A DNA stretch of 64,000 bases, from NCBI RefSeq assembly GCF_023055435.1, contig NW_025964354.1, positions 2,108,001 through 2,172,000 on the forward strand, in the 5' to 3' direction. The stretch comes from Haliotis rufescens. Its lineage: Eukaryota. Numbering within the stretch: position 1 is the first letter of the stretch; every line of letters starts with the position of its first letter. Shown here one piece after another: positions 1-56,236 of this stretch. The notes beneath the pieces are model-generated. The model saw nothing but the letters and a program-made list of their open reading frames with translations, did no database searches and was not told the origin of the DNA. The position numbers and the translations under genes are program-made.

Positions 1-47
1 ATGTTGTACATATGAACTGCTTCACTGCACACAGCCCAGCAGAGCGA

Positions 48-160
48 ACATTCTCGTGTATGCTGTTCAGCAGAACGTACATTCTCGTGTATGGTGTACA
101 GTAGAATGTACATTCTCGTGTATGCTGTACAGTAGAACGTACGTTCTCGTGTATGCTATT
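48..160. repeat. 31-bp tandem repeat at the start of intron 1
   Basis: Unit ACATTCTCGTGTATGCTGTACAGTAGAACGT starts at 48, 79, 110 and 141; one unit fewer at 12669, 27300 and 43283. Confidence 0.85.
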
Positions 161-1030
161 CTTTGGAATGAATCAGATTCCGATCAATCTTTCAATAAAG
201 ATATTCTTTTCGTCTTGTGATCGTTAAACTCTTGCAATAACAACCCGACTAATGTTATATACACCATGCACAGGACTACACAACAAGCAGGCCTCCATGC
301 GTTAACCCTTTAACGTGCAGTACGTGATGTCCTCAGGTTACATGCTTAATTATCCACATCGCTGTTCACAAGGGATTTGTTCTAAACGATCAGTCGATGT
401 GTACATATAACATGTAAGTCATTGGATGTGTCCACGTTCCCCTGTCCTGTGTTATCACCGGCCCATGCAACACACTGTTGGTCATTGTATGTGTAATTCA
501 AGGCATGAAAAGATGCATAGAAATGAGAGGAAGTTAATCCCCCGGCAGTGACACCACATCAGCCCCTCTGTGTACAGGTGATTTCGCGTTAGTATTATTT
601 GTCCAGCAATAATTCAGCAGTTATGTATATATGGCATTCAAGTGAGTACAATGACGCCACCACGGGGTCTTTGGCAGCAATGTAGGTCACAGGTGCAAGC
701 GACGTTCTGACTATTTCCAACCACCAGTCCTGAAACACACCACCAACACGTCAGAGGATACACTATGTCAAGTGAAAAGTACACGTTTAGGGCTACGGCA
801 TTTTACAACAAATAGGTGAGGGGAAATAGGGCTTATCGTCGTGTTAACTTCACTAATATAGCGTTTTACATGCATGTGTTCGTGTGCGTGTGTTCGTGGG
901 TGGGTGGGTGGGGGTGGATTTGTGACGTCACACTGTTGTCCTTGCAGTTGATTCTGCGCCAGGAATATACTAGCCATACGGAACGTGCTTTTTAAAACCG
1001 ACACAACTATAGGTCAAAATGCAAAATAAT

Positions 1031-1194
1031 GCGGTCGGGTAGGCTAGTGGTTAAAGCGTTCGCTCATCACGCCGAAGACCCGGGTTCGATTCCCAGCATG
1101 GGTGCAATGTGTGAAGCTCGGTTCTGGTGTCCCCCGCCATGATATTGCTGGAATGTTGCTAAAAGTGGCGTAAAACCATACTCACTCACTCACT
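1031..1194 (+). mobile_element. SINE family A (tRNA-Asp/Glu-like head, (CTCA)n tail)
   Basis: A box TAGGCTAGTGG, B box GGTTCGATTCC, tail gatattgctggaatgttgctaaaagtggcgtaaaacc followed by ctcactcactcact. Confidence 0.85.
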
Positions 1195-1850
1195 TGCTGT
1201 TGAGTATTAATCCGTTTATTTCATAGTAGAAGAAGTAGAAGAAGAATACGCTGTAAAGATAATAATTTTGAATTGATCACATTTAGAATAACACATTATA
1301 ACATATGTCACAGTGGTCTCACAGATTAAATACAAAACAATGGGACATAACCGATACCTAACTCGTTACATTTAACAAGAAATAAATGATATTACATTGA
1401 TGTCAACCACTTTCACATGTTCAATAGACGTTTTCACTGAGAGGAGCTTATGCTAACTCGATGACCCTAGCAACCTTGTTGCTAGGCTGACGTCACATGG
1501 CACAAATTCCACAAATTAAGTCATCGGGTATTTTGACGTCATTGTAAACTTTGAGCTGGAAGGCCCATTCCACAAGGCGATCGTACTGTAGCTCAACGAC
1601 AGTCGTTGGTCTAAGTTAAAGTGTGTGATTTGTGGTAACCTTAATGCAACTATAATTTTGTGGAACGGACGCCTGAATTCTAAAGGTGGGCCATTGTAAG
1701 GTATTAAATTCATACCTTTCAACGTTTGACGTGTTTGAAGTATCATTGTGTAAAATTTAATTGGATTATACCGTGGATAGTGTAGGTGTCAGCCTATTCA
1801 CACTAAACAGTTTAATTCTAAAAACGTTATGAATGGCAAGTAATAAATAA

Positions 1851-1992
1851 AATACTAAACTCGCTACCGTGTAAAACCAATTTTATGAAACTCGTGAATA
1901 GTTGTGGTATCCGACTCGCTTTCGTTCGCCAGATACCACAACTATTCACTCGTTTCATAAAATTGGTATTACACGGGAGCTCGTTAAGTATT
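1851..1992. mobile_element. Hairpin MITE-like element (copy 1 only)
   Basis: 45-bp core arms 1867-1911 and 1932-1976 with 3 mismatches and a 20-nt loop, inside a ~550-bp segment absent from copies 2-4. Confidence 0.6.
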
Positions 1993-2591
1993 CTATATAT
2001 ATATAATAATAAACATTCTATGCCATAATGACATTGGACCTTTCTAGAAACAATATACATGCTAATCTCATGACTACTCTCTTAAGTACAACCCCTCATC
2101 ATTAGCTCTCAAAACGCGATGGAAGCCGTACGACACAACGAGGTACATTCTCATTGAAACAGATGTTCCAGTCAGCAAAGCAATCCTCAATATCATTAAT
2201 AAGATTCCCACTAACATGGAATACATGTGTTATTCATTAACCTGGCCTAAACAAAGAACAGGTAAGAGAGAATACCATGAATAACACCGTTGTCAACTAA
2301 ACTGTATAACACAAACAAGAAAAGGTTTTGTGCAAATTCTATTGAATTTTTATATAAAAATAAAATACAACTTGAAAACATCCATAAAGTCCTCAATGTT
2401 GCAGATAAACAGTGTTTGCATGTATAGCAGGACCCACCTGCACAGAGCATGCTTACATGAGATTGTGCAGACTCGTCCGTAATATTTCACGTGCTCATTC
2501 TCAAATTGCACTTACATAGGTTTTAAACTTATTTAAAACGTTAGGGTGTCTGTGTTGAATATGTTGAAAAGTCTAGTTTTTCTTGTCGCAG

Positions 2592-5500
2592 ATGGTGAGA
2601 GTGTCATCGTTAGAGAGACGGAAACGGCCTGATTCAGGTGGCAGGTGCCACGAGGGGCATCTGTCATTGCAATGTATGTACTAAACCCAAATGGAACCGG
2701 CGTCCTACTCGCTAACACAGCAAACCGGCACCTTGTTCTTCCTTTATATGAAGCCCGTGTCAACTTCAGTGGGAACTTGTCGGCAGGGCTTGTGATGTTT
2801 GATATGAGCAATGTCAGCGGATCTGATGCTGGGACGTACACGTGTGGTAACGGAGGAGTGACTCGTATCATTCCGAACTGTGGACAGACGCTCATTGTTC
2901 TAGGTGAGTGTATATCAATGCAATTCAACTTTTAGCCCAATATTTCCATCCTCAGGTGCTGAGAGTCAAACTACAGCCATCGCCTCCCCTGGAGATAACA
3001 GTACAATCAGCTTCATCATCCCACAAGGTGGTCTTGGGACAGGATCGTCATTCTACTTTGTTACACCAAGTGGTGTGATAGCCTTTATTGTATTCTCATC
3101 GGGAACATTTGTCGCCACAAATCCTTACAAAGATAGAGTAGTGTTTGAAGGCAGCTATTCCTCTAGGAACATCACATTTGTGCTGCAGAATATATCAAGA
3201 TCGGATGCTGGGCAGTATACATGTGGCATTGGGGGTGCTTCTAGTCTGATAGAGGGCTGTGGCTTGAAACTTATTGTCATTGGTATGTCGTTTGCAATTT
3301 GATAAGTGAATATATCTTCGTGTTATTAATCCATGATCATCAGCGAGGTAAAGGACAAATGCACAGGCATAATTCCACACACAACATCAATGTGACAGCA
3401 TCAAATCATATATAGTTATTCAGAGAGTATTATTATAAAGAATCCAATTCTTGACGAAAGCCCAAAATGAAATAAGGATGAACCGTCATCACGTGTGGCA
3501 TGGCTCATTATATTTAATCACCTGATGGCTTGAGTACAACTGGCTTGCCTGGCACAGACTCGAGTATTCACAGGCCGACTTGATATACCTTGAAACAACA
3601 TTTACTCAGTCATTCTCATATTTAAAAAATAGAGCACCGACAACCATTCCAAGTCGCCGTGAATACCTGTAAGATTGTTGAAGCGGCGTTTGGCAATATT
3701 CTCTCATCATTCCAGGTGAGCCGACCAAGCCAGTCATATCACTGCAATCTACTCCCGTGGTTGGCAGGAACGTCACGATGACGTGCTCATCTACATCTAC
3801 AACACTGCCTGCAGATCATGGACTGACCTTCACCTACACCTGGAAGATAGATGGTCTCAACATTACCTCGCCAGATGGCGCTAGTCTAACAGTTCCGGTT
3901 GAAAGTCATGACCAACCAGGTGTCACCTGTCACGTGACAGAGGATAAGGGCCTGGGAAGAGACAGTGACGTTCTGATGTTAACTCCTGACTGTAAGTATA
4001 TAACTATAGATTAACTGATACTGATCTGCATGTGGTGGTGGTACTTCTTGTTAGACAGTGTAACCACAGTGGAATGTCTACAACTTTGAACTGCATACAA
4101 ATGGTGTACTGCCAAGGTTACCATCACTCTGAACAATATTTCGATTGAATTAAGCTGAACAAAGATGGATTATACTTTTCCTAACTTGCCCGTACAGCAC
4201 AAAGTGGAAGGTTCATAATGTATATATAAATACTCAGTAGTGAAATATTACTTGCTAAACAAAAGTAATAAATATCCTTAATGATGAATATGCTATTTGG
4301 AAGGCACATGTCAAGTTACTTTTTATAAATAGACTACTGCACGTGTGTGTTGGGAAAGTCTTGCTTGGTTTGTAATATATATAAAACAAGGCTTTGTGTT
4401 TGAATTGATCATAGTGTCACACTATATATCCTTGATGATACGAATGAAAAGTTACGAAGAAGGTATTCAGTATTGAGTTTTATTTCTAATTATTTGACTT
4501 TACAATCGAATTGCAATAACTTTTGTTTACATAACTAAAAGCCAAGTTTTGGCGTTTGAATTGATTCGTAGCACTGATCTTACAGATCCTCCGTACAATG
4601 CCAGCATCTCGTCAACATCTGTACAAGTCAAGGAGGCTGACGTCGTACCCCAGGTCACGTGTGTCAGCACGTGTCGACCTGCATGCTCACATTCCTGGAA
4701 ACAAGGATCTCAGACAGTCGTGACTGGACAGGTCCTCACTCTTGGAGCAGCAAACAAGACCATGGCTGGCAGCTACGTGTGCAAGGCGACAAACGTATAT
4801 GGCACAATACAGAGTCCTGCTGTTTCACTTGATGTCCAATGTGCGTATGGCTGTATTTCATGTTAGAGTAAACCATGCTTGTGATAAGAGGCGACGAACG
4901 ATATCATGAGCATCAATTCACGGCAATTGTGATAACGTGAGTGAGTGAGTAAGTGAGTGTGGTTTTACGCCGCTTTTAGCAATATTCCAGCAATATCACG
5001 ACGGGGGACACCAGAAATGGGCTTCACACATTGTACCCATGTCGGGAATCGAACCCGGGTCTTTGGTGTGACCACTAGGCTACCCCACCGCCCCCAAATT
5101 TACTTGAGACATCATATATATTTACAGAGATGGTTTGCATATTTCAGCGTCTTCACTGTTGTATAGTCCTATTTTATCTAAAATGAAGTGAAGATACTTA
5201 TCACAATGTTTCTTAGTTTGCATAATTAAGACAAGTCGCATTACAACTAAGACGGAAGGTATAATTTAAATCCGCCTTTCACTCTTCAGATAAACCATCT
5301 GCAGTTTTAATGGCTAATGGTCAGTCCAATGCAACTGAAGTTGACGAAAGAGGCTCTGTGGTTCTGTCATGTGCAGTAGACAGTAATCCTTTCTCCAGCA
5401 TATCCATCATGAACGGCACTATTCGACTGAACCATGTGACAGAGGCAGCCGACGTCAGCTTCAACTGGACTGGAGCTGATTGTCTTGACGGCAGCGTCTA

Positions 5501-8459
5501 CACGTGTCTTGCAAGGAACATAGTTGGTGAAACGACAGCATCAGTAACAGTAAATATAAAATGTAGGTACCTTGATGAGGTATCTACCCGAGATATTCTT
5601 ACACCTATTGATATATTCTACCGGCACGTATATTACCTGGAAGAAGTATGGTCAATACTGACTGAAAATATTATTGGAAGTTAGAAGGTGATATGTTGAC
5701 TCATATCCTCATACTGACTTGTCAAGAAGCAATGTATTTGACAAGAAGTACGACTTTTCGATAAAGAAACTGCATTGATGATTCATCATGTATAAAACTA
5801 TAAAGTCACTGTCATTGCAATAAAATACTTGACAAAGAAATATTTTCAATGCAGGGAGAAACACGTGAAAAGAAATACTTTATACATTGAAGGTTCCCCG
5901 CGGCTCAATTTCCAATACCCCACAGGGAGGGACGTGTATGTTGACATAGGACAGCCAATCAGATTACAGGTGTACATCCTGGCCTTTCCACAACCGACCT
6001 TCACCTGGTTTAAACAGAATGGAGGTAGTGCAGAACCTGTCGACCTGTCAAAATGGCGCCAGTATGACGAGGCCATGACGTCATATATTGTCACAGATAT
6101 TGTTGAAGAGACGGATTATGGAGTGTATTATGTAAACGTCACAAACACACTTGGAAGGTTCCGAATGCAATTTCAACTTGGAGAGAAAGGTAGGTTTGAA
6201 TGAAATAATTGAACTCGCCTTTTACTTGCAAAATAAGTAGTTTTACGGAAACACTATTATAGGAACTTTATGAAGGTATGTTATTGTTTGTAAAGCAAAA
6301 CAATTTGATTGATAACACACACATGTACACATCCTTAGAGTGATTGTTTTCTTGTGATCATATCATGAAACTCTACGTCGTTTCCTTGTTCAATCTATAC
6401 TATGTCCCTCATCACATACAGCAACGCTTTCTGTACCGGAGAACTTCCAGTGTCAAAACAAAGCCGGCAGCTACATCCTTCAGTGGACACCGGGTGGTGA
6501 TGATGAGACAAGAGGCGTAGGGTTCCTGGTGGAACAAAGACTGCCACAGGCTAACTGGACCACAGTCTCCGCCACTGTTGCAAGTGATGGTATGATGAGA
6601 CATGTGCAGCTGCCTGAGTCTGGAGACAGGACCGTCTTCTTCAGGCTCTATGCTGCAGAGGGCGCTGCAAGGACGTCACCAGTGACAGCATCATGTACAA
6701 CAGTCACTGTTGCAGTGGACAATGGTATGTCAAACCGATAATGATTTTAGCGGTTCGTCGTTTGAGTTTTTTGGTGCTCACGTTTATAACGTCTCCAATA
6801 AACGTATTCTTAATTAGAAAAAGAAAAGATGATCATTAAGCTTGAAGTTTTCATTTTCTTCCATGGTTGGAGAATACAATGAGGCAGGTTAAATGTGATG
6901 CACTTCAAGACAGACCAAAGGTCTAAGCAAAAATATATAATTTCTCTAACGTGGGCGTTCGGATATCATATTTCTACTCGATGACTTTGTTTTGATAGAT
7001 GAAGTTATCCAAACTAACATCTCTTTCTCTGTGTTCAGGTGAGCTATCGTTCGGAGCAGGAGTGGGCGTTGGCCTTGTTGTTGCAGTAGCTGTTGTAGCA
7101 GTGTCCCTGGCTGTTGTTTGCATCTGCAGGAAGAAGTGCCTGTCATTGAAGAATGGTATGAAAACACAATGTGCATGGCTTATCAGGATAGGAGATGTTT
7201 GTCTCCCCTTAGACAAATCACTAGCTCATTTTATATTGCCATATGATATGAATGACGCTAAGACGTCTCTCGGAAATAAACACCTCCATTATAAACATGA
7301 AAATATTTGCAAAATAGCTGTCGACCTGCATTTTTAGTAGGCCTATGTATTTAATTATTTTGTAAGGAGCAGTTAGAATGATATGAAACAGAAAATGTAA
7401 ACATGAGCTGCACCACACTGTTAATACACTATTGATGACTGGGATGATTTGATCACGCAATAATTGTTACGAACATGACACGGGTACAAGCTGTTATAGT
7501 GTGGGAGATATGTGTTTCCAGATCCGTCGAGGCAGAAAGAAGAGGAGTCTGTGTAAGTACTTGTGGCTCTTGCTATACTTAACTAAGTGAGAACTGAAAC
7601 ATGTTGTTGCTGAATTGAAAGCAGAACAGATGTGTAGATCATTGTACCCTGTTATTACTGTATCAGTATAGACTATATCACTTGTGATAAAACGTAATTC
7701 GCAGTGGAAAGTTAATTCATGTTATATGGACACACACAATAGAATATCCTGCAATGTGACGCTACTGTTTCTATACAGATATCATGAGGTAGCTGCATCT
7801 ACCGTGACAACTCAGCACAGTCGCCAGCAACATCGTCAGTCGGGTAAAACAAGGATTATAGACTGGACATTAGTCACATTGCTGGACCCGAAAAAAACAA
7901 TATTGACTGTGGAAGAAGACGGTGGTCGATGTTGTTTTGTTTACCATAAAGCATTTAGTGGCCTAAAATATGATTGTTTTTATGTAAGAAAGCGACAAAG
8001 GCAGATTCAAAATAGAATGACACGAGATCGCTCCTTGGCGAATGAAATGGCGGAATTTCAAGTACATAAAGAAAAGAGGTATATATCCAATCCTTATCAA
8101 CCAATGCTAGGATTCAATGCGAATGTTTCAACCTGGTTATTGACGATCGTTTCAGTGATATGCAGGTCGTATGTCCTTGTTTCATAAAATATTAAGGTCA
8201 CAAGGAGGATTAAGATTGATTACCCACCACTAGTATTTATTGCGAGCTCAATCTTGTCACAAATAGGTTTCCTGTGCATGGTTTGTACAGGGGCGACCAC
8301 AGGCTGATGTGTAATAATATCATTACAGGCGCGGGGACATCTGGCAGCACTTACGACGCCCTCACATCTGACAGGGACACGCCAACTGAAGCACCAACTT
8401 ACGAGAAACTAGAGAAACAGTACGTGAACATGGCGGTGTCTGCTAATGATGAGACCTAA
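2592..8459 (+). CDS. IgSF receptor paralogue 1 (5'-partial; nonsense codon in V1, otherwise open)
   Basis: Exons: V1 2592-2903 (TGA at 2630-2632 where other copies have AGA), V2 2956-3282, Ig3 3716-3991, Ig4 4586-4840, Ig5 5290-5562, Ig6 5893-6189, FnIII 6422-6724, TM 7039-7155, cyt1 7522-7552, cyt2 7779-7843, cyt3 8329-8459. All AG/GT-bounded and in phase. Position 1 corresponds to sequence ~30 nt after the leader donor in other copies, so the leader is just outside the window. Confidence 0.75.
4937..5095 (-). mobile_element. SINE family A in the Ig4-Ig5 intron
   Basis: (GTGA)n, body and reverse B/A boxes. Equivalent copies at 19098-19258, 33490-33651 and 49291-49454; TSD-like caaatttacttga. 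Confidence 0.85.
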
Positions 8460-12500: not shown

Positions 12501-13850
12501 CAGGGAAGTCTACAAATAGTCTGTGCAAAATCTTTCATGGAGATCAAAATACGCCATTTGTGGATTATTATCCTGATCTCATGTGGTGCCAGATGTAAGT
12601 ATATGTGAATTATATACGTGAAAATAGTACAGTTGAACTGCTTCACTGCACACAGCCCAGCACAGCGAACATTCTCGTGTGTGCTGTTCAGCAGAACGTA
12701 CATTCTCGTGTGCGCTGTACAGTAGAACGTACATACTCGTGTATGCCATTCTTTGGAATGAATCAGGTTCCGATCAATCTCTCAATAAAGATATTCTTTC
12801 AGTCTTGAGATCGTTAAACTCTAGCAATAACCTGACTAATGTAATTATACACGCTGTGCACAGGACTTAACAACAAGCAGGCCTCCATGCGTTAACCCTC
12901 TAACGCGCAGTACGTGATGTCCTCCGATTACATGCTTAGTCATACATGTGGCTGTTCACAAGGGATTTGTTCTAAACGGTTGGACGATGTGTACATATAA
13001 CATGTAGGTAATCGGAGGTGTCGACGTTCCTCTGTCCCGTATTCACCAGTGTTATCACCGGCCTATGCCACTCACTGTGCGATCACTAGCGGAATAACGC
13101 ACCCATTGTATGTGTAATTGAATGCTAAGCCATGTATGTAAAGATGCATAGAAATAAGAGGAAGTTAATCCCCGGGCAGTGACACCACATCAGCCCCTCT
13201 GTGTACAGGTGATATCACTTTAGTATCATTTGTCCAGCAATCATTCACCAGTTATGTATATATATAGCATTCAAACAAGCACAATGACGCCACCACGGGG
13301 GTTTTGACAGCAATGTAGGTCACAGGTACAAGCGACGTCCTGACAATTTCCAACCCCCAGTCCTGAAACACACCACCAAGACGTCAGAGGATACCTTATG
13401 TCGAGTTAAAAGTACACGTTTAGGGTTACGGCATTTTACAACAAATAGGAGAGGGGACATAGGGCTTATCGTCACGTTCAAGTAACTGCAGTTATATAGC
13501 GTTATACATGCATGTGTTCGTGAGCGTGTGTGTGTGTTGTGCGTGGGTGGGTGGGTGGGTGTGTATTTGTGACGTCACACTGTTGTCCTTGCAGTTGATT
13601 CTGCGCCAGGAAATACTAGCCATACGGAACGTGCATTTTAAAACTATAGGTCATTATGCAAAATAAAGTGAAATTTGGGCGTCTTTCCTTTTTCCAGAAT
13701 CAACAGATTTTCATGATATTTCGATTCTGTAGCATATTTAAACGTTTTTTGATATGACGCTGTAGCAAATAGAATTTGAATGGATGTGACATCTAAAACA
13801 CCGTGATTAGGCAAGAATGCTCAACTCGCTGAAGGGTTGGGGGGGGGGGG

Positions 13851-14309
13851 GGTGCGGTCGGGTAGACTTGTGGTTAAAGCGTTCGTTCGTCACGCCAAAG
13901 TGTGAGTGAGTGAGTGAGTGAGTTGAGTTTAACGCCGCTTTTAACAGTATTCCAGTTATATCGCAGCATGTCAGCTTAATGTGGGAGGAAAGCCCGAAGT
14001 GATGCAGGTCTCAGACATTTACCACTTCGGTGAAACCCACGAGCACTGGTATGGTGCTGACAAACCTAGAAACATAATTGGGGCGAACCGGGATTGAAAC
14101 CCACAATCATAGGTTTCTTGCGTGCCCAAGGGACGCAACTCTGCACAGCGAATCGCGGCGCCTTAGACAACTAGGCCACCCGTGCCCCGTCACGCCAAAG
14201 ACCCGGGTTCGATTCCCAACATGGGTACAATGTGTGAAGCTCAGTTCTGGTGTTCCCGGCCATGAAAGTTCTGGAATATTGCTAAAAGTGGCATAAAACC
14301 ATACACACT
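13851..14309 (+). mobile_element. SINE A interrupted by an antisense SINE B (13901-14188)
   Basis: 12-bp TSD GTCACGCCAAAG at 13889-13900 and 14189-14200; the uninterrupted SINE A is at 1031-1194. Confidence 0.85.
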
Positions 14310-18224: not shown

Positions 18225-18680
18225 TATATAACACTATATATATTTATATTCTAAAACGACACATGTGTTTCTCCTTGATGATACAAATGGAACGTTTAGA
18301 AGAACGTATTCAGTATTGAGTTATATTTCTAATTACTTTCGTTTATGTAACTAAAAACCAAGTTTGAATTGATTCGTAGCACTGATCTTACAGATCCTCC
18401 GTACAATGCCAGCATCTCGTCAACATCTGTACAAGTCAAGGAGGCTGACGTCGTACCCCAGGTCACGTGTGTCAGCACGTGTCGACCTGCATGCTCATAT
18501 TCCTGGAAACAAGGATCTCAGACAGTCGTGACTGGACAGGTCCTCAGTCTTGGTGCAGCAATTAGGACCATGGCTGGCAGCTACGTGTGCACGGCAACTA
18601 ACACATATGGCATAACACAGAGTCCTGCTGTTTCACTTGATGTCCAATGTGCGTATGGCTGCATTTAATGTTAGAGTAAA

Positions 18681-18994: not shown

Positions 18995-19097
18995 CGTGCT
19001 GAGAATGATTATTAAAGTGAATGAAACATGATGACATGCTGGAACTAGTTTGTATGAAATATGGAATATAAAACACAGGTGGTCAAATTTACTTGAG

Positions 19098-19258
19098 TGA
19101 GTGATAATGGTTTTACACCGCTTTTAGCAATATTCCAGCAATATCATGGCGGGGCCAGCAGAAATGGGCTTCACACATTGTACCCATGTGGGGAATCGAA
19201 CCCGGGTCTTCGGCGTGACGACCGAACGCTTTAACCACTAGGCTACCCCACCAACCCC
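19098..19258 (-). mobile_element. SINE family A
   Basis: Same structure and site as 4937-5095. Confidence 0.85.
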
Positions 19259-46100: not shown

Positions 46101-49100
46101 CGTGCTCATCTACATCTACAACACTGCCTGCAGATCATGGACTGACCTTCACCTACACCTGGAAGATAGATGGTGTCAACATTAACTCGCCAGGTGGCGC
46201 TAGTCTAACAGTTCTGGTTGAGAGTCATGACCCACAAGATATCACCTGCCACGTGACAGAGGATGAGGGCCTGGGGGGAGATAGCGACGTTCTGATGATA
46301 ACTCCTGACTGTAGGTATATAACTATAGATTACCAGATACACATCGGTATGTGGTGGTACTTGTTGTTAGACAGTGTAACCACAGTGGAATGTCTACAAC
46401 TTTGAACTGCATACAAATGGTGTAATGCCAAGGTTACCGTCACTCTGAACACTATTCCGATTGAATTAAACTGAACAAAGATAGATTATACTTTTCCTAA
46501 CTTGCCTGTACAGCACAAAGTGGAAGGTTCATAATGTATATATAAATACTCAATAGTGTAATATTACTTGCTGAACAAAATACCCTGTAATGATAAATTT
46601 GCTATTTGAAAGCACTACTGTACGTGTGTATTGGGAAAGTGTTGCTTGGTTTGTAATATATATTATAAAAAAAAGGCTTTGAGTTTGAATTGATCATAGT
46701 ATACACATGCCCAACAGTTAAGCGCCACCGACCATTTTTGTGAGCTGTTACTTTTGGCACTTAATGATGACTGTTATAACGAGATGTATGTACGAGTGTT
46801 ATAAGCCGTATATGTAAACCTCATGTGATGCAAAAGTTGTCCCAAAGCAAGTTTTTCTTGTGTTCCAAAAGAATATGAGCAGAATGGACTTTTACCGAAG
46901 ACCAGAAATTGAAGGATTAGAAAACATTGAAAAACTTTTTCTGTCATGTAACTGTCATGATATCAGCAGATCAAATCAGTTGTCACATAGACACCCTAGG
47001 GAGTGCAGAGTCTATTGCAAGACAGAAACGTCAGTAACGTGTGTATGATCCACGGACATTGACCACAGCTTCAACCCTACGCCCTCATACTCATTACAAG
47101 TCGTTGAATGCTTCTCTGAGGCAAACGGATCCATTCTTCATGAAGTGCGGCTTCAAGTCCAGCGAGATTTTGAACTGGGGGATCACTATGTCTGATTTTC
47201 CGGCCAAGAATGTCCAAGAGATGCTCAATCGGATTAAGATCCGGACTACAGGCCGGCCAAGGAAGAGTAACAATAGCTTCTTGACGCAAATAAGCCAAAA
47301 CTGCCCGAGATCTTTGTGGTCTAGCATTGTCGTCCATGTAAACAGGTCTTGTCTGAAGAGGATGGTTGTCAAAATGAGGGACTACCACTGGACAAAGAAC
47401 GGCATCTTGGCATTGTTAGCAATTTAGGTTTCCAAGAATTGTCACCAGCGGAAGTTTGCAGCCGAAGGAAACACAACCCCCTGCCACATGCTAAGGTCTT
47501 CTGGATGTTACTTGGTGCAAAACGAGCATTACGTTGCCTCCAAACACGTATTCGACCATCAACAGTTCGAAGCAGCATTCGACACTCGTCAGACCAATGG
47601 ATCCTTCTCCAGTTGGCCAAGTTCCATCGACTATGGGCACGACACCATATCAGACGATTCCGCATGTGCCTCTCAGTCAGTTGAGTGAGTGAGTGAGTGA
47701 GTGAGTATGGTTTTACGCCGCTTTTAGCAATATGCCAGTTCCATCGACTATGGGCACGACACCATATCAGACGATTCCGCATGTGCCTCTCAGTCAGTTG
47801 AGTGAGTGAGTGAGTGAGTGAGTATGGTTTTACGCCGCTTTTAGCAATATGCCAGCAATATCACGGCGGGGACACCAGAAATGGGCTTCACACATTGTAC
47901 CCATGTCGGGAATCGAACCCGGGTCTTTGGCGTGACGAGCGAACGCTTTAACCACTAGGCTACCCGACCGCCCCCAGTCAGTTGAGGACGTTTTACTGGT
48001 CTTCTGGCGTTATATCTGATGGATAATTCACTGCAGTCTTAAATCTGTTCATGTGGCAAATGGATTTCGTCTGACTATCCTTAAAAGACGTCTATCCTCT
48101 CTGTTAGAGGTCTTTCTTGGACTAAGACTTGGACATCATTGGTTTGACCATGTTTGACAATCAAACGAGTGATAACACTGATGACGACCCATTTGCAGTG
48201 GCCATGCATGACATGCCAGCAATTTTCATGCCTATCACTTGCCATCTTTCAGCGTTCGTTTCCTTTCCTTGTGGTATCTGGACAGATGTGGGTTCATGAA
48301 ACATGAGGCCTAATTCAATCATATTTCGTATTTCTGATTCCCACACGTGAAATCAAGAGACTATGAATATGGTGGCGCTTAATTTTTGTGCATGTGTATA
48401 TAACACTATATATATTTATATTCTAAAACGACACATGTGTTTCTCCATGATGATACAAATGGAACGTTTAGAAGAACGTTTTCAGTATTGAGTTATATTT
48501 CTAATTATTTGACTTTACAATCGAATTGCAATTACTTTCGTTTATGTAACTAAAAACCAAGTTTGAATTGATTCGTAGCACTGATCTTACAGATCCTCCG
48601 TACAATGCCAGCATCTCGTCAACATCTGTACAAGTCAAGGAGGCTGACGTCGTACCCCAGGTCACGTGTGTCAGCACGTGTCGACCTGCATGCTCATATT
48701 CCTGGAAACAAGGATCTCAGACAGTCGTGACTGGACAGGTCCTCAGTCTTGGAGCAGCAAACAGGACCATGGCTGGCAGCTACGTGTGCACGGCAACTAA
48801 CACATATGGCATAACACAGAGTCCTGCTGTTTCACTTGATGTCCAATGTGCGTATGGCTGCATTTCATGTTAGAGTAAACCATGCTTGTGATAAGAGGCG
48901 ACGAACGGGATCTGGCCCTCTGACTTGCGTAGATCGATGCTCATGATTTCAAACACTGGATTGTCTGGTCCAGAAACGATTCAACAACAACTGGCGTTAA
49001 ACAACAAACAAATCATGTATAATAAAATAGAGTCTGGATCAGACAATATAGTAATTGACATCATGAGCATCAATTTACGGCAATTGTGATAACAGGACAA

Positions 49101-52100
49101 ACAACCAAAGATATAACATCACCACGGCTGATCACCCAATCCCTCTGGTCGCCTTTTACGATCCATTGTAAACCGGAAACTTCACGACGTGCTGAGAATG
49201 ATTATTAAAGTGAATGAAGCATGATGACATGCTGGAACTAGTTTGTATGAAATATGGAATATAAACCACAGGTGGTCAAATTTACTTGAGTGAGTGATAA
49301 TGGTTTTACGCCGCTTTGAGCAATATATTCCAGCAATATCACGGCGGGGGACAGCAGAAATGGGCTTCGCACATTGTACCCATTTGGGGAATCGAACCCG
49401 GGTCTTCGGCGTGACGAGCGAACGCGTTAACCACTAGGCTACCCCACCAACCCCAAACTTACTTGATACATCATATATATTTACAGAGATGCTTTGCATA
49501 TTTCAGCGTCTTCACTGTTGTATTGACATATTTTATCTAAAATGAAGTGAAGATACATATCACAATGTTTCTTAGTTTGCATAATTTAGACAAGTCGCAT
49601 TACAACTACGACGGATGGACAAAGTAAAGGTATAATTTAAATCCGCCTTTCACTCTTCAGATAAACCATCTGCAGTTTTAATGGCTAATGGTCAGTCCAA
49701 TGCAGCTGGAGTTGACGAAAGAGGCTCTGTGGTTCTGTCATGCGCAGTAGACAGTAATCCTTTCTCCAGCATCTCCATCATGAACGGCACTATTCGACTG
49801 AACCACGTGACAGAGGCAGCCACCGCCAGTTTCAACTGGACTGGAGCGGATTGTCTTGACGGCAGCGTCTACACGTGTCTTGCAAGGAACATAGTTGGTG
49901 AAATGACAGCATCAGTAACAGTAAATATAAAATGTAGGTACCTTGATGAGACTCTAAAGGTATCTGGTTTAATAACCAAGATATTCACACATCTATTGAT
50001 ATATTCTACAGCCACGTATGCCACCTGGAAGTAGTATGTCCAATATTGAGCGTAAATTTTATGGGAAATTAGAAGGTGATATGTTGACTCATATCCTCAT
50101 ACTGACTTGTCAAGAAGCAATGTATTTGACAAGAAGGACGACTTTTCGATAAAGAAACTGCATTGATGTATAAAACTATAAAGTCACTGTCATTGCAATA
50201 AAATACTTGACAAAGAAATATTTTCAATGCAGGGAGAAACACGTGAAAAGAAATACTTTATACATTGAAGGTTCCCCGCGGCTCAATTTCCAATACCCCA
50301 CAGGGAGGGACGTGTATGTTGACATAGGACAGCCAATCAGATTACAGGTGTACATCCTGGCCTTTCCACAACCGACTTTCACCTGGTTTAAACAGAATGG
50401 AGGTAGTGCAGAACCTGTCGACCTGTCAAAATGGCGCCAGTATGACGAGGCCATGACGTCATATATTGTCACAGATATTGTTGAAGAGACGGATTATGGA
50501 GTATATAATGTAAACGTCACAAACACACTTGGAAGATTCCGAATGCAATTTCAACTTGGAAAGAAAGGTGGGTTTGAACTAAATAATTGAACTAACTGAA
50601 ACAAAATATACCTTTGACTGAAATAACACAAACACGCACCATTATAGTAATTCATTATCATGTGATCATGTTTCCTTATTGAATCTATGGTATTTTCTTT
50701 ATCTTTACATACAGCACCACTTTCTGTACCGGAGAACTTCCAGTGTCAAAACAAAGCCGGCAGCTACATCCTTCAGTGGACACCGGGTGGTGATGATGAG
50801 ACAAGAGGCGTAGGGTTCCTGGTGGAACAAAGACTGCCACAGGCTAACTGGACCACAGTCTCCGCCACTGTTGCAAGTGATGGTATGATGAGACAGGTGC
50901 AGTTTCCTGAGTCTGGAGACAGGACAGTCTTCTTCAGGCTCTATGCTGCAGAGGGCGCTGCAAGGACGTCACCAGTGACAGCGTCATGTACATCATTCAC
51001 TGTTGCAGTCGACAATGGTATGTCAGACCGATACTATATTTCAATGTTCATTGTATGAATATTTTTGTGCTCACTTTTATAACTTTTTAACTTTTTTTTC
51101 AATAAACATATCCTTAATGTTTCAGAGATCGTAGAAACATGATTATCAAACTTCATTACGCTTTAATCGTTGTTGAAGTTTTCATTTCCTTCCAGGTAAA
51201 ATATGATGCACGTCAAGATCAGATAGACAAAGCGAAAACATTTTATTGCTCTTACGGGGGCGTTCACCATCCAATTTCATTCGTGTGATATTCAAATACT
51301 ATTACTTACGATAGGCTCCGATATCATGCTTCTAAAATTTGACTTTGTTTTGAAAGATGAAGCTATCTAAACTAACATCCCTTTCTCTGTGTTCAGGTGA
51401 GCTATCGTTCGGGGTAGGTGTGGGCGTTGGCCTTGCTGTTGCAGTAGCTGCTGCAGCAGTGTGCCTGGCTGTAGTTTGTATCTGCAGAAAGAAGCGACTG
51501 TCACTAAGGAATGGTATGTATACATGGCTTATCAGGATAGGAGATACACGTTTCCCTGAGACAAAGCACTAGCTCAGTTTATATTGCCACATGATATGGA
51601 TGACAGTTCACTCAGACGACTCTCGAAATATGAGCGAACACACAACATGAACAAAGTATGTAGCTGATGTGGCTTAACAATGCTGTTGAAGGTTGTCTGA
51701 GGAAGCGGATCAGTAATGTTCGTGGCAAGTTCATTCTACAGCTGTACATAATGTGAACATTCGTCTAAATCTACCACATCAACACTAAAGCTATAAATGA
51801 TGCATGGTAATAGGAGGGTAAGAACCTAAGACGTGGATGATGATGAAAGTGAAGCCCAACTCCAAAGAACTTGAACTGAGAAAGAGATACCAGTTTGACA
51901 TAGTCAGAGACCTAATCCTGATACCATGTTTAACATGTTTGTGATATTTCAAAATGGATACTAGGGTACCAGCCTGATATTGGTATCGGCTTGTCATTAT
52001 GACATAACTCTTGCATTATTAGTGAGTGAGTGGACAGGTTCTTTAAGACGCATCAGCAATATACCAGGTATTTGCGACAAAGTATGGACAATAAGTGGAC

Positions 52101-54238
52101 CACTTCGTATAAAGTTCAACCAATTTCATCACTCCCCTAACTGCAGTCATGTGGTGTTCAAGACGTACAAACTGAAAAGGAATGTACTACACCAGAAAAT
52201 GTGTGAGATGGACTTTACCATAACAGGATGTACACCATGACAGGACACAGATTTATACAGTTTGCACATCGGTTTTTCGATTCATACCTCAATGAACCGG
52301 AAAAAATACAGTCAATGTTTGAATGCACACAAGATACCGAACTATCGGCTCACATTACTTTTATACTGCCAACCAAGAATATTCTTCAAGATCTATGCAC
52401 CACCAACAAATGAGGATGGGATGGTCAACTGAACACAAGATCTCTTTGGAGAAATAGCTGGAAGGTCATCAGGAAGAGGATGGAAGATGTCTGAAGCTGT
52501 GACGTTGGGGAATGTTTTTTCAGGCAACTTCTGTGGTTAAGATAACATCCATACAGCATTTCTCATGGGCCAGACTTGCATCAGTAAAATCAGTCCTCGC
52601 TTAGAGTTAACAACTGTGTCTGCACACATTGGGCAACTCATGTAGAAACAACTTGACACCAATAGTGATAGTGTCGCTTGGGTTTCTATCCATGTAATAA
52701 TGGGTCACCATATGCTCATCTAATTTCACTGACGTGGTTTGATGGGATATTCCATTAAAACAATTATTTACTTGTGTTAAATTAAATGCACCTTATTGTA
52801 ATATAATGTTGGATCGAAATGAAATATGTCAGTTAAGGACAAGTTCATTCTTTTATTTGACAAAATAAGCATTGTACACATACAATACTAGTTTTGTTGC
52901 TGACCAGTTAAAATGATATGAAACAGAAAATGTAAAACACACATGCACCACACTATTAATACACTATTGATGACTGGGATGATTTGATCACGCAATAATT
53001 GTTACGAACATGACACGGGTACAAGCTGTTATAGTGTGGGAGATCTGTGTTTCCAGATCCGTCGAGGCAGAAGGAAGAGGAATCTGTGTAAGTACTTTTG
53101 GCTCTTGCTATACTTAAAATAAGTGAGTACTTAAACATGTTGATGCTGAATTGAAAGTGGAACAGATGTGTTGTTCATTGTACCCTGTTATTACTGTATC
53201 AGTGTAGACTATATCATTTGTGATAAAACGTAATTCGCAGAGGAAAGTTAATTCATGTTATATGGACACACACAATAGAATGTCCTGCAATGTGACGCTA
53301 CTGTTTCTATACAGATATCATGAGGTAGCTGCATCTACCGTGACAACTCAGCACAGTCGCCAGCAACATCGTCAGTCAGGTAAAACAAGGATTATAGACT
53401 GGACATAAGTCACATTCTTGTTTACTGGACCCGAAAAAAACACAATATTGACTGTGGAAGAAGACCGCGGTCGATGTTGTTTTGTTCGGGTTCATAAAAC
53501 ATGTAGTGGCATAAAATATAATTGTTTATTATATAAGAAAGCGACAAAGGCACATTCAAAATAGGCTTGGGGTCGCTTCTGTCGAATGTCACGTGACCGC
53601 TCCTTGGCAAATGAAATGGCGGAATTTCAAGGACATAAAGAAAGGAGGTTTATATCCAATCCTTGTCAACCAATGGTGTATTGTTGTCCTTATAATTTGG
53701 ATTTCACGAAAAAAAGTTTGTAAAAATTTATCTCATTATAATTATTTGTATTTGTGATGCATATCTTCCTTGGTGTCTGGTATTTCCAGTTAGCATACTT
53801 ATTTAAAATGTAAGGGTTCACAAGTTCCAGTTACCACAGAGAATCTGACTCGACTGTCAAAGATACTTATTGATGTATGGTTTCAAATACAAGGAGCTGC
53901 TGAGAACGCGGATGTTTCCACCTGGTTATCGTCGATTGTTTCAGTTACATGCATATCGTATGTCCTTGTTTCATGAAATATTGAGGTAACAAGGAGGATA
54001 AACACCATTATTGTTTATTGCGAGCTCAATCTTGTCACAAATAGGTTTACTGTGCATGGTTTGTACTTTGGGCGACCACAGGATGATGTGTAACAATACC
54101 ATTACAGGTGCGGGGACATCTGGCAGCACTTACGACGCCCTCACGTCTGACAGGGACACGCCAACAGAAGCACCAGCTTACGAGAAACTAGAGAAACAGT
54201 ACGTGAACATGGCGGTGTCTGCTGATGATGAGACCTAA
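43151..54238 (+). CDS. IgSF receptor paralogue 4 (44-nt frameshifting deletion in V1; all other exons open)
   Basis: Exons: leader 43151-43208, V1 45185-45452 (268 vs 312 nt; stop 45349-45351), V2 45505-45831, Ig3 46035-46310, Ig4 48593-48847, Ig5 49661-49933, Ig6 50271-50567, FnIII 50715-51017, TM 51397-51513, cyt1 53057-53087, cyt2 53315-53379, cyt3 54108-54238. Confidence 0.7.
43856..44334 (+). mobile_element. SINE A with nested antisense SINE B (43906-44197)
   Basis: Paralogous to 13851-14309. Confidence 0.85.
46704..48396 (-). mobile_element. Tc1 element with nested SINE A (47803-47974) and a 117-bp internal duplication
   Basis: Same TIRs, site and SINE TSD as copy 2; ORFs 47077-47388 and 47369-47782 carry the DDE motifs. 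Confidence 0.92.
49291..49454 (-). mobile_element. SINE family A
   Basis: Paralogous to 19098-19258. Confidence 0.85.
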
Positions 54239-56236
54239 CTGCAATCATCAAAACAGAGTTCAGTGTATGACAAAGCAGCACATTCAATATGTCTCATTAT
54301 ACGTCTTCCATGAGGTCTTGGCTTACATCAGTGGGTTGGCTCTATCTTTCTATTTGAAAGCGTCTGAGACGCAATAATTCGAAGTGCCGAGTTACGTCCC
54401 TTAGGTGTGCCAGACACCCGTGATCGTGTGTATCTCAGATCCGTTGTGGATACCCTTCGTAGCTTTTCCGCACTGTACCAGTGCTCGTGGGTTTCATCAA
54501 ATCAGTTTTCCTCCCACACCAAGCGTTAACACCATTTATAACTGAAGAATTCCTACACAGCTGCGTTAAACTTATTACCCAATATGAGCTACAATCACTA
54601 AGCAACCAAACTGCACACACACACTCCATTTTCTGTAACTATATTTGATTTCAGAGATGTACATTGTTTCCCCAAAGCAATCTTATTTTTAGAAGCTTAT
54701 AGATATTTACATGTATATACATATACATATCTTTAAAGACAGTTTAAGAGAGATTATGTATTCCCTGAGGATGGTTAGATATAGCTGTAGTCACTAAAGC
54801 GCTGTGCAGTAGGGAACAATACGGCGGGTTTCACAAACACACATGCCACGACATAGCATACACTTGAAGCTTCATAGTAGACTTGACATACGTTTGAAGC
54901 GCTAACTTTTTTTCCAATCTCGTGTGCGGAAATATCGTTATGATATTGAGGGGCAGCATTACCTAATCGTCACTCAGTTCTCTATGTACATCTGCATTTC
55001 TTGGGCGTACCAGAAAACTACGACCTTCGGTTCGAATACCAGATTCGCCCTCTTTATAATTCTAGGTTTGTTAGCCCCATACCCATGCTCGTAAGTTTCA
55101 CCAAAGTTGACACGCCCTGATAATAATACTCACCAAAGCACGGTTAGCTAACTCACTCAGCTAAACAATTGTTCAACAAACTGTATATGCTCAACTGTAT
55201 ATAAATATGATTTTTAACATGTACATTATTATCAGTATTACTTCTTTCATTTGGAGCCTCTTGATATCCGTTACCTATTGCGACAAGAAGATCATGATAA
55301 TACCTGACACTAGCTGTGACGATGAACTCTATGTCACGATCCGAATGTTTCCCACCAGTGCTGACATGTTTGTTTGTTTTCAAAAATGCAATAGGCACTG
55401 TGTGTTTCTTCAGGAGAAAATTGGTGTTTCCGCGATTGCCTCCGTTGTCAAGCGGAATGTCAGTGGTATCAAAATACATAAAATTATGGTACTTGTTGTT
55501 ACCCTTCCTGGCACTCGGCATTAAGGAGATACAGTACAATATGTCTGAGTTGGGTATTTCTTCACACCAGTACTGTATTACTGGCATAAGTCTAGACTCG
55601 TACAAGCAGCGACACATACACATACATCCACGTCGCTTTGCAGTGCAATGAACCTGAAAGTCTTTTTAAACCCCATTTCATCTCCCTTTCGTTTGGCGAC
55701 GATCGCCTTTTTAACAGCTGGTTATTCATCATATTTTCTTCTCAAGGTTTGACAAGACAGACCACAAGAAAAAAGTGTTAATCTGTGTTATAAATCTACA
55801 ACATTACTATATAAACTATGTACTTTAATAGATATGTCAATTGTCAAGCAGACTAAGTTGTTTGTTCCCCACCTTCAGCAGTGTTAAATTCGCAGGTACA
55901 TCACAAGATTCATGTGAACGTGACGGCCTTGTCGCTACTTTGTTTGAGGATTGAAGTTGTATTTACTGACGAATCACTTCATGGTAAATTTGCTCACGTG
56001 AGGCTCTGTCTTCATCAGCTGATGAACGTCAACAAATACAACTTCAATCCTTATATTGACAGATACATAAATCATAACAAAACAACCCATTAAACATCAA
56101 ACTTTAATTATTTACAGCGAACTATATCTCCGCGGAGAGTCTAAACGTCGTGACGTCATCCGTCCCAAACATTCAATTTGGAGTGACATCCCTTGCTTTT
56201 ACAAACGTCAGAAAATGGCGGCTACGGCAATGTCAT

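What the first reader, a model, noticed from the sequence alone, without database searches (positions are those of the whole stretch)
1..55945. Tandem cluster of diversifying V-domain Ig receptors with ITIM/ITAM tails: candidate invertebrate immune or allorecognition locus
Seen: four head-to-tail paralogues of SP-V-V-4xIg-FnIII-TM-tail. Divergence concentrates in the N-terminal V loops while the membrane-proximal Ig6 and tail are nearly invariant, and the copies show lesions and mosaicism. Known: tandem array, variable distal V domain, tyrosine-motif tail and birth-and-death turnover characterise vertebrate paired-receptor clusters (Siglec, CEACAM, SIRP) and the Hydractinia Alr allorecognition genes, which also use unusual V domains and an FnIII-like stalk. 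Inference: this may be an uncharacterised lophotrochozoan analogue. The exons are split across short ORFs and the leader and micro-exons are easy to miss.
Basis: partly seen in the sequence, partly recalled or inferred. Interest (0 to 1): 0.85.

Follow-up and report, generated by a model that had tools for sequence, protein, structure and literature searches.

The report
Abalone-only tandem Ig receptor gene array
The window, from the red abalone genome, holds four of eight tandem copies of a membrane receptor gene found only in abalones; the copies differ most at the tip of the outermost domain and share a tail with conserved tyrosine signalling motifs, but no data yet link them to immunity or self-recognition.

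Summary
The window (Haliotis rufescens, contig C576:2108001-2172000) carries four head-to-tail gene units. Each has the exons leader, V1, V2, four Ig, FnIII-like, TM, two micro-exons and tail, with AG/GT splice sites; the domain exons are all phase 1-1. The array is larger than reported: four more units lie just upstream, eight in all over about 120 kb, and the Fn and tail exons occur nowhere else in the genome.

- **State of the copies:** W3, U4 and U2 are intact. W1 and W4 have a dead V1 exon only. W2 also has a frameshifted Fn exon. U1 and U3 are wrecks.
- **Divergence:** It is highest in V1/V2 and enriched in the tip loops. Intron identities show the copies are mosaics.
- **Main correction:** All ten annotated proteins of this subfamily in four abalone species carry one V domain or none, never two. 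The V1-V2 intron is 49-56 nt, against at least 144 nt for every other intron. V1 and V2 are therefore probably alternative exons.
- **Tail:** It has two ITIM-type motifs, YEKL and YVNM. The ITAM spacing is non-canonical, and no activating partner copy exists.
- **Family:** It is abalone-restricted. The NCBI names (hemicentin-, NCAM-, contactin-like) are arbitrary.

The scan had already flagged a related cluster 122 kb downstream.

The parts
1..8459 (+). Unit W1 (its leader exon lies 33-90 nt before window base 1). Exons: V1 2586-2903 (dead: acceptor TG, in-frame stop), V2 2956-3282, Ig3 3716-3991, Ig4 4586-4840, Ig5 5290-5562, Ig6 5893-6189, Fn 6422-6724, TM 7039-7155, micro-exons 7522-7552 and 7779-7843, tail 8329-8459.
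   Evidence: annotated protein P0002 uses the W1 exons from Ig3 to the tail
12537..22664 (+). Unit W2. Exons: leader 12537-12594, V1 15092-15394 (15-nt in-frame deletion), V2 15447-15773, Ig3 15977-16252, Ig4 18394-18648, Ig5 19465-19737, Ig6 20075-20371, Fn 20631-20928 (5-nt deletion, frameshift, 6 stops), TM 21241-21357, micro-exons 21724-21754 and 21976-22040, tail 22534-22664.
   Evidence: the truncated annotated protein P0159 maps here
27168..27225 (+). Unit W3 leader exon: signal peptide, donor GTAAGT, ends in phase 1. An in-frame upstream ATG lies at 27123.
29753..30070 (+). W3 V1 exon (318 nt, phase 1-1).
30071..30122 (+). The 52-nt intron between V1 and V2. It is 49-56 nt in all seven units that have both exons; every other intron is at least 144 nt.
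30123..30449 (+). W3 V2 exon (327 nt, phase 1-1). The AlphaFold model has a V-set fold. The F-strand Cys and the start of strand G carry a C-x11-C-G motif.
30976..34764 (+). W3 constant Ig exons: Ig3 30976-31251, Ig4 32792-33046, Ig5 33858-34130, Ig6 34468-34764.
34909..35211 (+). W3 FnIII-like exon.
   Evidence: the paralogue P0161 has a Pfam fn3 hit at the aligned position
35616..35732 (+). W3 transmembrane exon. There is no charged residue in the hydrophobic span.
37377..37699 (+). W3 micro-exons, 37377-37407 (31 nt) and 37635-37699 (65 nt). The ITIM S-V-Y-H-E-V spans their junction.
38426..38556 (+). W3 tail exon with STYDAL, PAYEKL, QYVNM and the stop codon.
43151..54238 (+). Unit W4. Exons: leader 43151-43208, V1 45179-45452 (44-nt deletion, frameshift), V2 45505-45831, Ig3 46035-46310, Ig4 48593-48847, Ig5 49661-49933, Ig6 50271-50567, Fn 50715-51017, TM 51397-51513, micro-exons 53057-53087 and 53315-53379, tail 54108-54238.
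   Evidence: annotated protein P0152 is this unit with V1 skipped
54239..55941 (+). 3' flank of the repeat unit; the duplicated sequence ends here.
   Evidence: 23024-24341 matches 54646-55941

Best explanation
This is part of an eight-unit tandem array of an abalone-specific gene family. The genes encode type-I membrane receptors of the immunoglobulin superfamily: a signal peptide, one membrane-distal V domain, four Ig domains, one FnIII-like domain, a TM helix and a roughly 105-residue cytoplasmic tail. Each unit carries two old, homologous V exons (V1 and V2, about 30% identical). These are most likely used alternatively, not together, possibly because the 49-56-nt intron between them is too short to be spliced out. 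The array evolves by duplication, exon decay and segmental exchange. The 3' constant part is homogenised, while the V exons keep old lineages and change fastest in the tip loops. This suggests that the V tip is the ligand-binding face. Inferred, not shown: ligand binding leads to phosphorylation of the conserved tail tyrosines, which recruit SH2 proteins. The two ITIM-type motifs would recruit SHP/SHIP-type phosphatases, and YVNM would recruit Grb2/PI3K-type adaptors, as shown for ITIM-bearing Ig-FnIII receptors of oyster haemocytes. The ligand and the tissue are unknown.
For: - **Array and exon models:**
- **Organism and family names:**
- **Subfamily size:** the Fn and tail exons hit only these eight units in the 1.33-Gb genome.
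- **Folds:** the V2 model has pLDDT 81.5 and matches V-set domains at TM 0.65-0.73. The Fn model has pLDDT 82.3 and matches titin, fibronectin and Ihog FnIII domains.
- **One V per protein:** all 10 annotated subfamily proteins in 4 Haliotis species have V1 or V2 or none. Their lengths of 707/710 (+15) equal the exon sum with one V.
- **Dispensable V1:** W1 and W4 have a dead V1 but otherwise open exons.
- **Short intron:** the V1-V2 intron is 49-56 nt, against at least 144 nt for all others.
- **Origin of the pair:** related genes on C479 and downstream on C576 have a single V exon in the one locus checked from each cluster, so V1/V2 arose by exon duplication.
- **Selection:** dN/dS is 0.18 in Ig6 against 0.47-0.65 in V. 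In tip loops defined from the model, omega is 0.84 (V2) and 1.21-1.85 (V1) against 0.40-0.51 elsewhere; 56/5000, 7/5000 and 0/5000 permutations reach the observed value.
- **Mosaics:**
- **Tail motifs:** the four motif tyrosines are conserved in all seven aligned subfamily proteins from four species; three of them (plus the Asn of YVNM) are also kept in two distant paralogues.
- **Oyster precedent:** PMC11841013.
Against:
- Alternative use of V1/V2 rests on automatic NCBI gene models, which may avoid very short introns or be confused by near-identical paralogues. One model (P0002) is a chimera of two units.
- Introns of about 50 nt are spliced in many invertebrates.
- Omega above 1 rests on few changes, and the five-copy V1 set includes pseudogene copies.
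- Tyrosine motifs are short and can occur without function. No SH2 partner was tested.
Confidence: 0.6

Rival explanations
1. It is an immune receptor cluster of haemocytes, a functional analogue of Siglec/CEACAM/PECAM/LILR-type inhibitory receptors. The variable V tips bind microbial or self glycans or proteins, and the ITIMs damp activation.
For: Two ITIM-type motifs are conserved across the genus. The V tip loops evolve fast. The array shows birth-and-death turnover. An oyster Ig-FnIII-ITIM receptor is haemocyte-expressed, binds microbes and recruits SHIP2 (PMC11841013).
Against: No expression, induction or binding data exist. No activating partner copies exist, and no ITAM of canonical spacing. 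The literature searches found nothing on this family in abalone.
Confidence: 0.3
2. It is a neuronal or epithelial cell-recognition and adhesion family. It would diversify surface identity in the way sDscam, protocadherin or IgLON/Dpr families do, using alternative V exons and many tandem units.
For: Duplicated alternative N-terminal Ig exons and tandem units resemble arthropod Dscam/sDscam logic (reference list of PMC11999971). The best solved-structure sequence matches are Robo, contactin, titin and Dscam Ig domains. The nearest non-abalone proteins are NCAM/Kirrel/nephrin-like. One annotated isoform joins the V1 of one unit to the constant exons of the next.
Against: Those matches are generic multi-Ig similarity (24-31% identity). 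ITIM-type tails are not typical of Dscam or protocadherins. The chimeric isoform may be an annotation artefact.
Confidence: 0.25
3. It is an allorecognition or gamete-recognition locus, the counterpart of Hydractinia Alr or Botryllus systems, or an addition to the fast-evolving abalone fertilisation proteins.
For: Alr genes also form a cluster and have atypical V-set domains, an FnIII-like stalk, ITIM/ITAM tails, pseudogenes and exon shuffling (bioRxiv 10.1101/2022.03.04.482883). The V domains here also lack the canonical B-strand Cys.
Against: Abalones are solitary and do not fuse, so there is no known allorecognition phenotype to explain. No allelic polymorphism data could be obtained. No sequence homology to Alr was found or tested.
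Confidence: 0.07
4. The array is largely non-functional or partly an assembly or annotation artefact, made of recent segmental duplicates decaying into pseudogenes.
For: Five of the eight units carry at least one lesion. The NCBI models are inconsistent, including a chimera and a truncated 'peroxidasin homolog'.
Against: Three units are fully open, and two more are open once the dead V1 is skipped. dN/dS is well below 1 in the constant exons. The tail and domain order are conserved in four species. The copies differ by 2-20% and by transposon content, which is more than haplotype differences would give.
Confidence: 0.05

Closest known systems
Crassostrea gigas CgNCAM1 (an Ig-FnIII-TM receptor with two ITIMs; PMC11841013)
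   Same: It is a mollusc type-I receptor with several Ig domains followed by one FnIII domain, a TM helix and a tail with two ITIMs. Its signalling through an SH2 phosphatase (SHIP2) has been shown in haemocytes.
   Different: It has three Ig domains and no V domain of this type. It is a single gene rather than a tandem array with alternative V exons. No orthology was found: the nearest non-abalone hit to this family is a Patella protein at 27% identity.
Vertebrate ITIM-bearing IgSF clusters (Siglec/CD33-related, CEACAM1, PECAM-1, LILR/KIR)
   Same: They have an N-terminal V or Ig domain that varies, C2/I-type spacer domains, an ITIM plus an ITIM-like motif in the tail, tandem clusters with pseudogenes, and gene conversion.
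   Different: There is no activating partner with a charged TM residue and no sialic-acid-binding Arg signature was examined. An FnIII domain is present. The V domain lacks the B-F disulfide. There is no homology beyond the generic Ig fold.
Hydractinia Alr family (bioRxiv 10.1101/2022.03.04.482883)
   Same: It is a large clustered family with an atypical V-set domain, I-set domains, an FnIII-like membrane-proximal part, ITIM/ITAM tails, pseudogenes, exon shuffling and alternative splicing.
   Different: It belongs to a different phylum and no detectable sequence relationship was found. Alr has a genetically proven allorecognition role in a colonial animal, whereas abalone has no such phenotype.
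Mutually exclusive duplicated exons (arthropod Dscam1 Ig exon clusters; steric exclusion as in alpha-tropomyosin exons 2/3, stated from my own knowledge)
   Same: The exons are tandemly duplicated, homologous, of similar length and of the same phase, and they encode one Ig domain. The intron between them is very short.
   Different: There are only two alternatives per unit. Exclusivity is inferred from gene models, not from reads. The mechanism is untested in molluscs.
Neighbouring abalone IgSF cluster noted by this scan (s1-811082, 122 kb downstream, minus strand)
   Same: It lies on the same contig, has a related V domain with the Y-x-C ... IPxCG motif, and is abalone-only.
   Different: It is a different subfamily: V identity is about 35%, the Fn and tail exons are not shared, it has one V exon, and its tails are reported to differ between copies.

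Membership tests
Immunoglobulin superfamily, V-set domain | Nine-strand beta sandwich (A B C C' C'' D E F G) | tested here: met
   The AlphaFold model of W3 V2 has nine strands and pLDDT 81.5. Foldseek top hits are antibody and TCR V domains, CRTAM, CAR D1 and CD8, at E about 1e-6 and TM 0.65-0.73.
Immunoglobulin superfamily, V-set domain | Canonical B-F disulfide and C-strand Trp | tested here: not met
   No Cys is present in strand B of V1 or V2, and the C-strand Trp position holds F, Y or V. The F-strand Y-x-C is present and is followed by a second invariant Cys 12 residues on (C-x11-C-G).
Immunoglobulin superfamily, V-set domain | Pfam V-set above the gathering score | tested here: inconclusive
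   Single exons score 18.4-18.5 bits against a cut-off of 26. Full-length proteins score 27.8-28.5 bits.
Fibronectin type III domain | Seven-strand FnIII fold | tested here: met
   The model has pLDDT 82.3 and seven strands. Best PDB matches are titin Fn3, fibronectin FN14, IL-12Rb1 and Ihog FnIII, at E 1e-3 and TM 0.6-0.69. Pfam fn3 is not detected in this subfamily, but it is detected at the aligned position in paralogue P0161.
ITIM-bearing inhibitory receptor | Cytoplasmic (S/I/V/L)-x-Y-x-x-(I/V/L) motif | tested here: met
   SVYHEV spans the micro-exon junction and STYDAL lies in the tail exon. Both are conserved in H. rufescens, cracherodii, rubra and asinina.
ITIM-bearing inhibitory receptor | Tyrosine phosphorylation and recruitment of SHP/SHIP phosphatases; inhibitory effect | not testable with these tools
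   This needs biochemistry. The only precedent is in oyster (PMC11841013).
ITAM-bearing activating receptor | YxxL/I - x6-8 - YxxL/I | tested here: not met
   YDAL and YEKL are separated by 12 residues in all copies, so the motif is ITAM-like at most.
Paired activating/inhibitory receptor cluster (KIR, LILR, SIRP, Siglec type) | Copies with near-identical ectodomains but a short tail and a charged TM residue that couples to an ITAM adaptor | tested here: not met
   Every TM exon recovered (W1-W4, U2, U3, U4) lacks a charged residue in the span, and all eight tail exons carry the same motifs.
Hemicentin / NCAM / contactin / peroxidasin (the names given by NCBI) | Orthology and domain architecture of the named protein | tested here: not met
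   The names vary from copy to copy and from species to species. The architecture is V-4Ig-FnIII-TM, with no VWA/EGF, GPI-type contactin layout or peroxidase domain. The best non-abalone hit has 27% identity and 206 bits, against at least 337 bits within the family.
Mutually exclusive exon pair | Adjacent homologous exons of the same phase and similar length | tested here: met
   V1 is 318 nt and V2 is 327 nt. Both are phase 1-1 and they share 28-31% amino-acid identity.
Mutually exclusive exon pair | Never joined to each other in mature mRNA | tested here: inconclusive
   Ten of ten annotated proteins have at most one V, but these are gene models. No reads could be examined.
Hydractinia Alr family | Sequence or profile homology to Alr domains; allelic polymorphism controlling fusion | not tested
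   No Alr sequence was on hand. The resemblance is by architecture only.

The most novel reading that the evidence does not exclude
Each unit chooses one of two old V exons by steric exclusion, because the intron is too short to splice. In addition, V exons of one unit can be spliced to the constant exons of a downstream unit, as in the annotated isoform that joins U4 leader+V1 to W1 Ig3-tail. Together these would give abalones a combinatorial repertoire of surface receptors with ITIM-type signalling. That would be a mollusc counterpart of sDscam/protocadherin-style variable-cassette loci, coupled to immune-type tails.
Probability: 0.12. Interest if true: 0.8.

Novelty: new variant of a known kind. 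Interest (0 to 1): 0.5.

Why it matters
Lineage-specific clusters of Ig receptors with tyrosine-motif tails underlie innate recognition in vertebrates and allorecognition in a cnidarian and a tunicate. Molluscs have few characterised examples, and none in abalone, a farmed and endangered group hit by infectious disease. This array offers several things:

- defined gene models that replace misleading automatic names;
- a V domain with an unusual cysteine staple across its most variable loop;
- a clean natural test of whether a very short intron enforces an either/or choice of duplicated exons.

If the receptors prove to be haemocyte-expressed and polymorphic, they would be candidate recognition or checkpoint receptors for abalone disease resistance studies.

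Tried and rejected
- **Loci in other species:** The arrays of H. cracherodii, H. rubra and H. asinina could therefore not be read, and conservation of the short intron across species is unknown.
- **Transcript-derived ORFs:** A search with the V2 ORF for short ORFs that would show the upstream junction found nothing.
- **Ig6 exon search:** The search against 1.84 billion representatives gave one specific hit (the species' own protein). All other hits were generic giant multi-Ig proteins at 23-35% identity.
- **Strand versus loop variability in V2:** A crude comparison shows no difference (odds ratio 0.94). Only the three tip loops are enriched.
- **Post-hoc loop windows:** These gave higher omega values, but they were chosen by eye and are superseded by the model-defined loops.
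- **Exon-wide positive selection:** Rejected, because all exons have dN/dS below 1.
- **Literature:** Searches for abalone, IgSF, ITIM and hemicentin found no description of this family.
- **ORFs downstream of 56 kb:** They have no informative Pfam hits.
- **Joined models:** The joined spliced model was not sent to any search tool. Exons were searched one by one by reference, and full-length searches used annotated proteins returned by the tools. The only joined step was a local concatenation of Ig4-Ig6 peptides for one tree, which was unresolved.


Full report
**What is there.**
The window is G000:C576:2108001-2172000 of a 1.33-Gb assembly. Annotated proteins that match it exactly are from Haliotis rufescens, the red abalone. 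Self-comparison shows a head-to-tail repeat of about 14-16 kb with 84-98% identity between units. Using the intact third unit as a guide, every exon type is found once per unit, in the same order and on the + strand.

In unit W3 the exons are:

| Exon | Coordinates |
|---|---|
| leader | 27168-27225 |
| V1 | 29753-30070 |
| V2 | 30123-30449 |
| Ig3 | 30976-31251 |
| Ig4 | 32792-33046 |
| Ig5 | 33858-34130 |
| Ig6 | 34468-34764 |
| FnIII-like | 34909-35211 |
| TM | 35616-35732 |
| micro-exon 1 (31 nt) | 37377-37407 |
| micro-exon 2 (65 nt) | 37635-37699 |
| tail | 38426-38556 |

All have AG/GT boundaries, and all domain exons are in phase 1-1, the classic layout of Ig-superfamily genes. The exon sum with both V exons is 816 codons from the ATG at 27168.

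**Domains.**
- Per-exon Pfam hits are weak V-set for V1 and V2, and Ig_2/Ig_3/I-set for the next four exons. The 'Fn' exon has no fn3 hit.
- An AlphaFold model of the V2 exon (pLDDT 81.5, nine strands) matches antibody and TCR V domains, CRTAM, CAR D1 and CD8.
- The Fn exon model (pLDDT 82.3, seven strands) matches titin, fibronectin and Ihog FnIII domains at E about 1e-3. A distant paralogue has a Pfam fn3 hit at the aligned position.
- The V domains are atypical. They have no B-strand Cys and no C-strand Trp. They keep an invariant S-D-A-G-x-Y-x-C followed by eleven variable residues and C-G. This implies, by inference only, a disulfide staple across the F-G (CDR3-like) hairpin.

**The array is eight units, not four.**
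Searching the whole genome with the Ig6 exon and then fetching 70 kb upstream shows four more units, U1-U4. The first in-window unit's leader exon lies just before window base 1. The Fn exon and the tail exon each hit exactly these eight places in the genome.

State of the units (the U2 TM exon was located):

| Unit | State |
|---|---|
| W3, U4, U2 | fully open |
| W1 | V1 has lost its acceptor (TG) and has an in-frame stop |
| W4 | V1 has a 44-nt deletion |
| W2 | V1 has a 15-nt in-frame deletion; Fn has a 5-nt deletion causing a frameshift |
| U1, U3 | lack several exons and carry stops |

**Divergence and mosaicism.**
- Pooled Nei-Gojobori estimates give dN/dS of 0.65 (V1), 0.47 (V2), 0.50 (Ig3), 0.65 (Ig4), 0.33 (Ig5), 0.18 (Ig6), 0.39 (Fn) and 0.44 (tail). 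Both dS and dN are highest in the V exons: dS is 0.16-0.21, against 0.06-0.09 in Ig4, Ig5, Ig6, Fn and tail.
- Intron identities change partner along the gene. For example, U2 is 86% identical to W2-W4 in intron 1 but 97-98.5% in the Ig5-Ig6 intron. W2 resembles W3 at the 5' end (97.5%) but W1 at the 3' end (96%).
- The copies are therefore mosaics. The low divergence of the constant part is largely homogenisation, while the V exons retain old lineages.
- In a protein tree, V2 lineages of H. rufescens and H. cracherodii are interleaved. V1 and V2 are two deep clades, with V1 also seen in H. rubra and H. asinina.
- With tip loops (B-C, C'-C'', F-G) defined beforehand from the structure model, omega in V2 is 0.84 in the loops against 0.40 elsewhere (56 of 5000 random codon sets reach the loop pN). 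In V1 of the three intact copies it is 1.21 against 0.51 (7 of 5000).
- The claim that divergence concentrates in V loops is supported. Positive selection is only suggested.

**The main correction: probably one V per protein.**
- All ten annotated proteins of this subfamily in four Haliotis species contain V1 or V2 or neither, never both. Their lengths of 707 and 710 residues (722 and 725 with an upstream ATG) are exactly the exon sum with one V.
- Units with both V exons usable are modelled with V1 (U2, W2). Units with a dead V1 are modelled with V2 (W4). Three H. cracherodii genes use V2.
- The intron between V1 and V2 is 49-56 nt in all seven units that have both, whereas every other intron in these genes is 144-3267 nt.
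- Related genes elsewhere have a single V exon in the one locus checked from each cluster, so V1/V2 is an exon duplication.
- Same-phase homologous neighbours separated by a very short intron are the textbook setting for mutually exclusive exons. I rate alternative use at about 0.6.
- One annotated isoform (P0002) joins the leader and V1 of U4 to Ig3-tail of W1, 19.6 kb downstream. This is either an artefact or inter-unit splicing.

**Tail.**
After the TM exon the tail reads, in motif terms:
- S-V-Y-H-E-V, of ITIM type, split over the micro-exon junction;
- S-T-Y-D-A-L, of ITIM type;
- then, twelve residues later, Y-E-K-L;
- then Y-V-N-M, a Grb2/PI3K-type motif (this assignment is from my own knowledge);
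- W3 alone has a fifth Tyr near the C-terminus.

The four motif tyrosines are conserved in all seven aligned subfamily proteins from four species, and three of them (plus the Asn of YVNM) are also kept in two distant paralogues. The YDAL-x12-YEKL pair does not meet the canonical ITAM spacing. No unit has a charged TM residue or a short tail, so there is no activating partner.

**Family and novelty.**
- A profile search finds about 55 annotated relatives, all from Haliotis. They carry a medley of names: turtle-, nephrin-, contactin-, NCAM-, CEACAM5-, sialoadhesin- and hemicentin-like. Scores then drop to a Patella protein at 27% identity, followed by generic Ig proteins.
- Related V exons form further clusters on C479 (at least 17), on C90 (at least 25) and downstream on C576 on the minus strand. 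The last of these was already noted by this scan as an abalone-only receptor cluster (s1-811082).
- The closest solved structures by sequence are only generic: Robo, titin, contactin and CEA.
The other two criteria, expression and polymorphism, could not be tested.

**Mechanism.**
- *Shown:* the gene structure, the folds (by model), the conservation pattern and the motifs.
- *Inferred:* a type-I receptor whose V tip binds a ligand and whose phosphorylated tail recruits SH2 proteins. The closest functional precedent in molluscs is oyster CgNCAM1 (three Ig, FnIII, TM, two ITIMs). It is haemocyte-expressed, binds microbes and recruits SHIP2 (PMC11841013).
- The architectural resemblance to Hydractinia Alr genes is real, but it carries no evidence of shared function. 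Immune, neural-adhesion and other roles all remain open.

**Limits.**
- The joined spliced model was not searched. Exons were searched by reference, and full-length searches used annotated proteins returned by the tools.
- A local concatenation of Ig4-Ig6 peptides was used for one unresolved tree.

Noticed in passing
window 31862-32182 (- strand); similar copies at 17333-17610 and 47408-47685: A Tc1/mariner-type transposase fragment (Pfam HTH_Tnp_Tc3_2, E 1.5e-11) sits in the Ig3-Ig4 intron of units W2, W3 and W4. It accounts for much of the intron length difference from W1.
   Followed up: partly
window 37-157, 12658-12746, 27289-27377, 43271-43360: A 31-bp tandem repeat (about 3-4 copies) lies 60-70 nt downstream of every leader exon, at the start of intron 1, and is conserved in all four units. 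Its function is unknown.
   Followed up: no
window 62936-63343: A 48-bp tandem repeat of 8.5 copies lies outside the array. An ORF on the minus strand across it gives a sub-threshold Pfam Bflower_2 hit, probably a repeat artefact.
   Followed up: partly
window 47620-47855: A perfect 117-bp direct duplication (2.0 copies, 100% match) containing a (GAGT)n run lies in the Ig3-Ig4 intron of W4, next to the transposon fragment.
   Followed up: no
G000:C90:3.3-6.5 Mb (example L010:5089-5412): At least 25 V-like exons, most with an identical 118-codon open frame, are spread over about 3 Mb. In the one example read (L010) the V domain has the same Y-x-C ... IPxCGQKLVV ending but a longer C-x13-C loop. 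This is a separate, larger abalone V-domain expansion.
   Followed up: partly
G000:C479:2.06-3.03 Mb (example L011:4707-5030, 8839-9087): At least 17 genes with a single V exon 39-49% identical to V2, and a conserved Ig3 exon, form the sister cluster. NCBI calls them turtle-, nephrin-, contactin- or NCAM-like. In H. cracherodii the matching proteins are on the same 45-Mb chromosome as this array.
   Followed up: partly
P0002 (NCBI hemicentin-2-like isoform X2), mapping to L006 (U4 leader and V1) plus window 3716-8459: This annotated isoform is a chimera of two neighbouring units. It skips the rest of U4 and also the leader, V1 and V2 of W1. It reflects either mis-assembly of RNA evidence among near-identical paralogues or real inter-unit splicing.
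   Followed up: partly
window 27123-27167 (and the same position in the other units): An in-frame upstream ATG adds 15 residues before the signal peptide in several NCBI models. The downstream ATG gives the better signal peptide.
   Followed up: no
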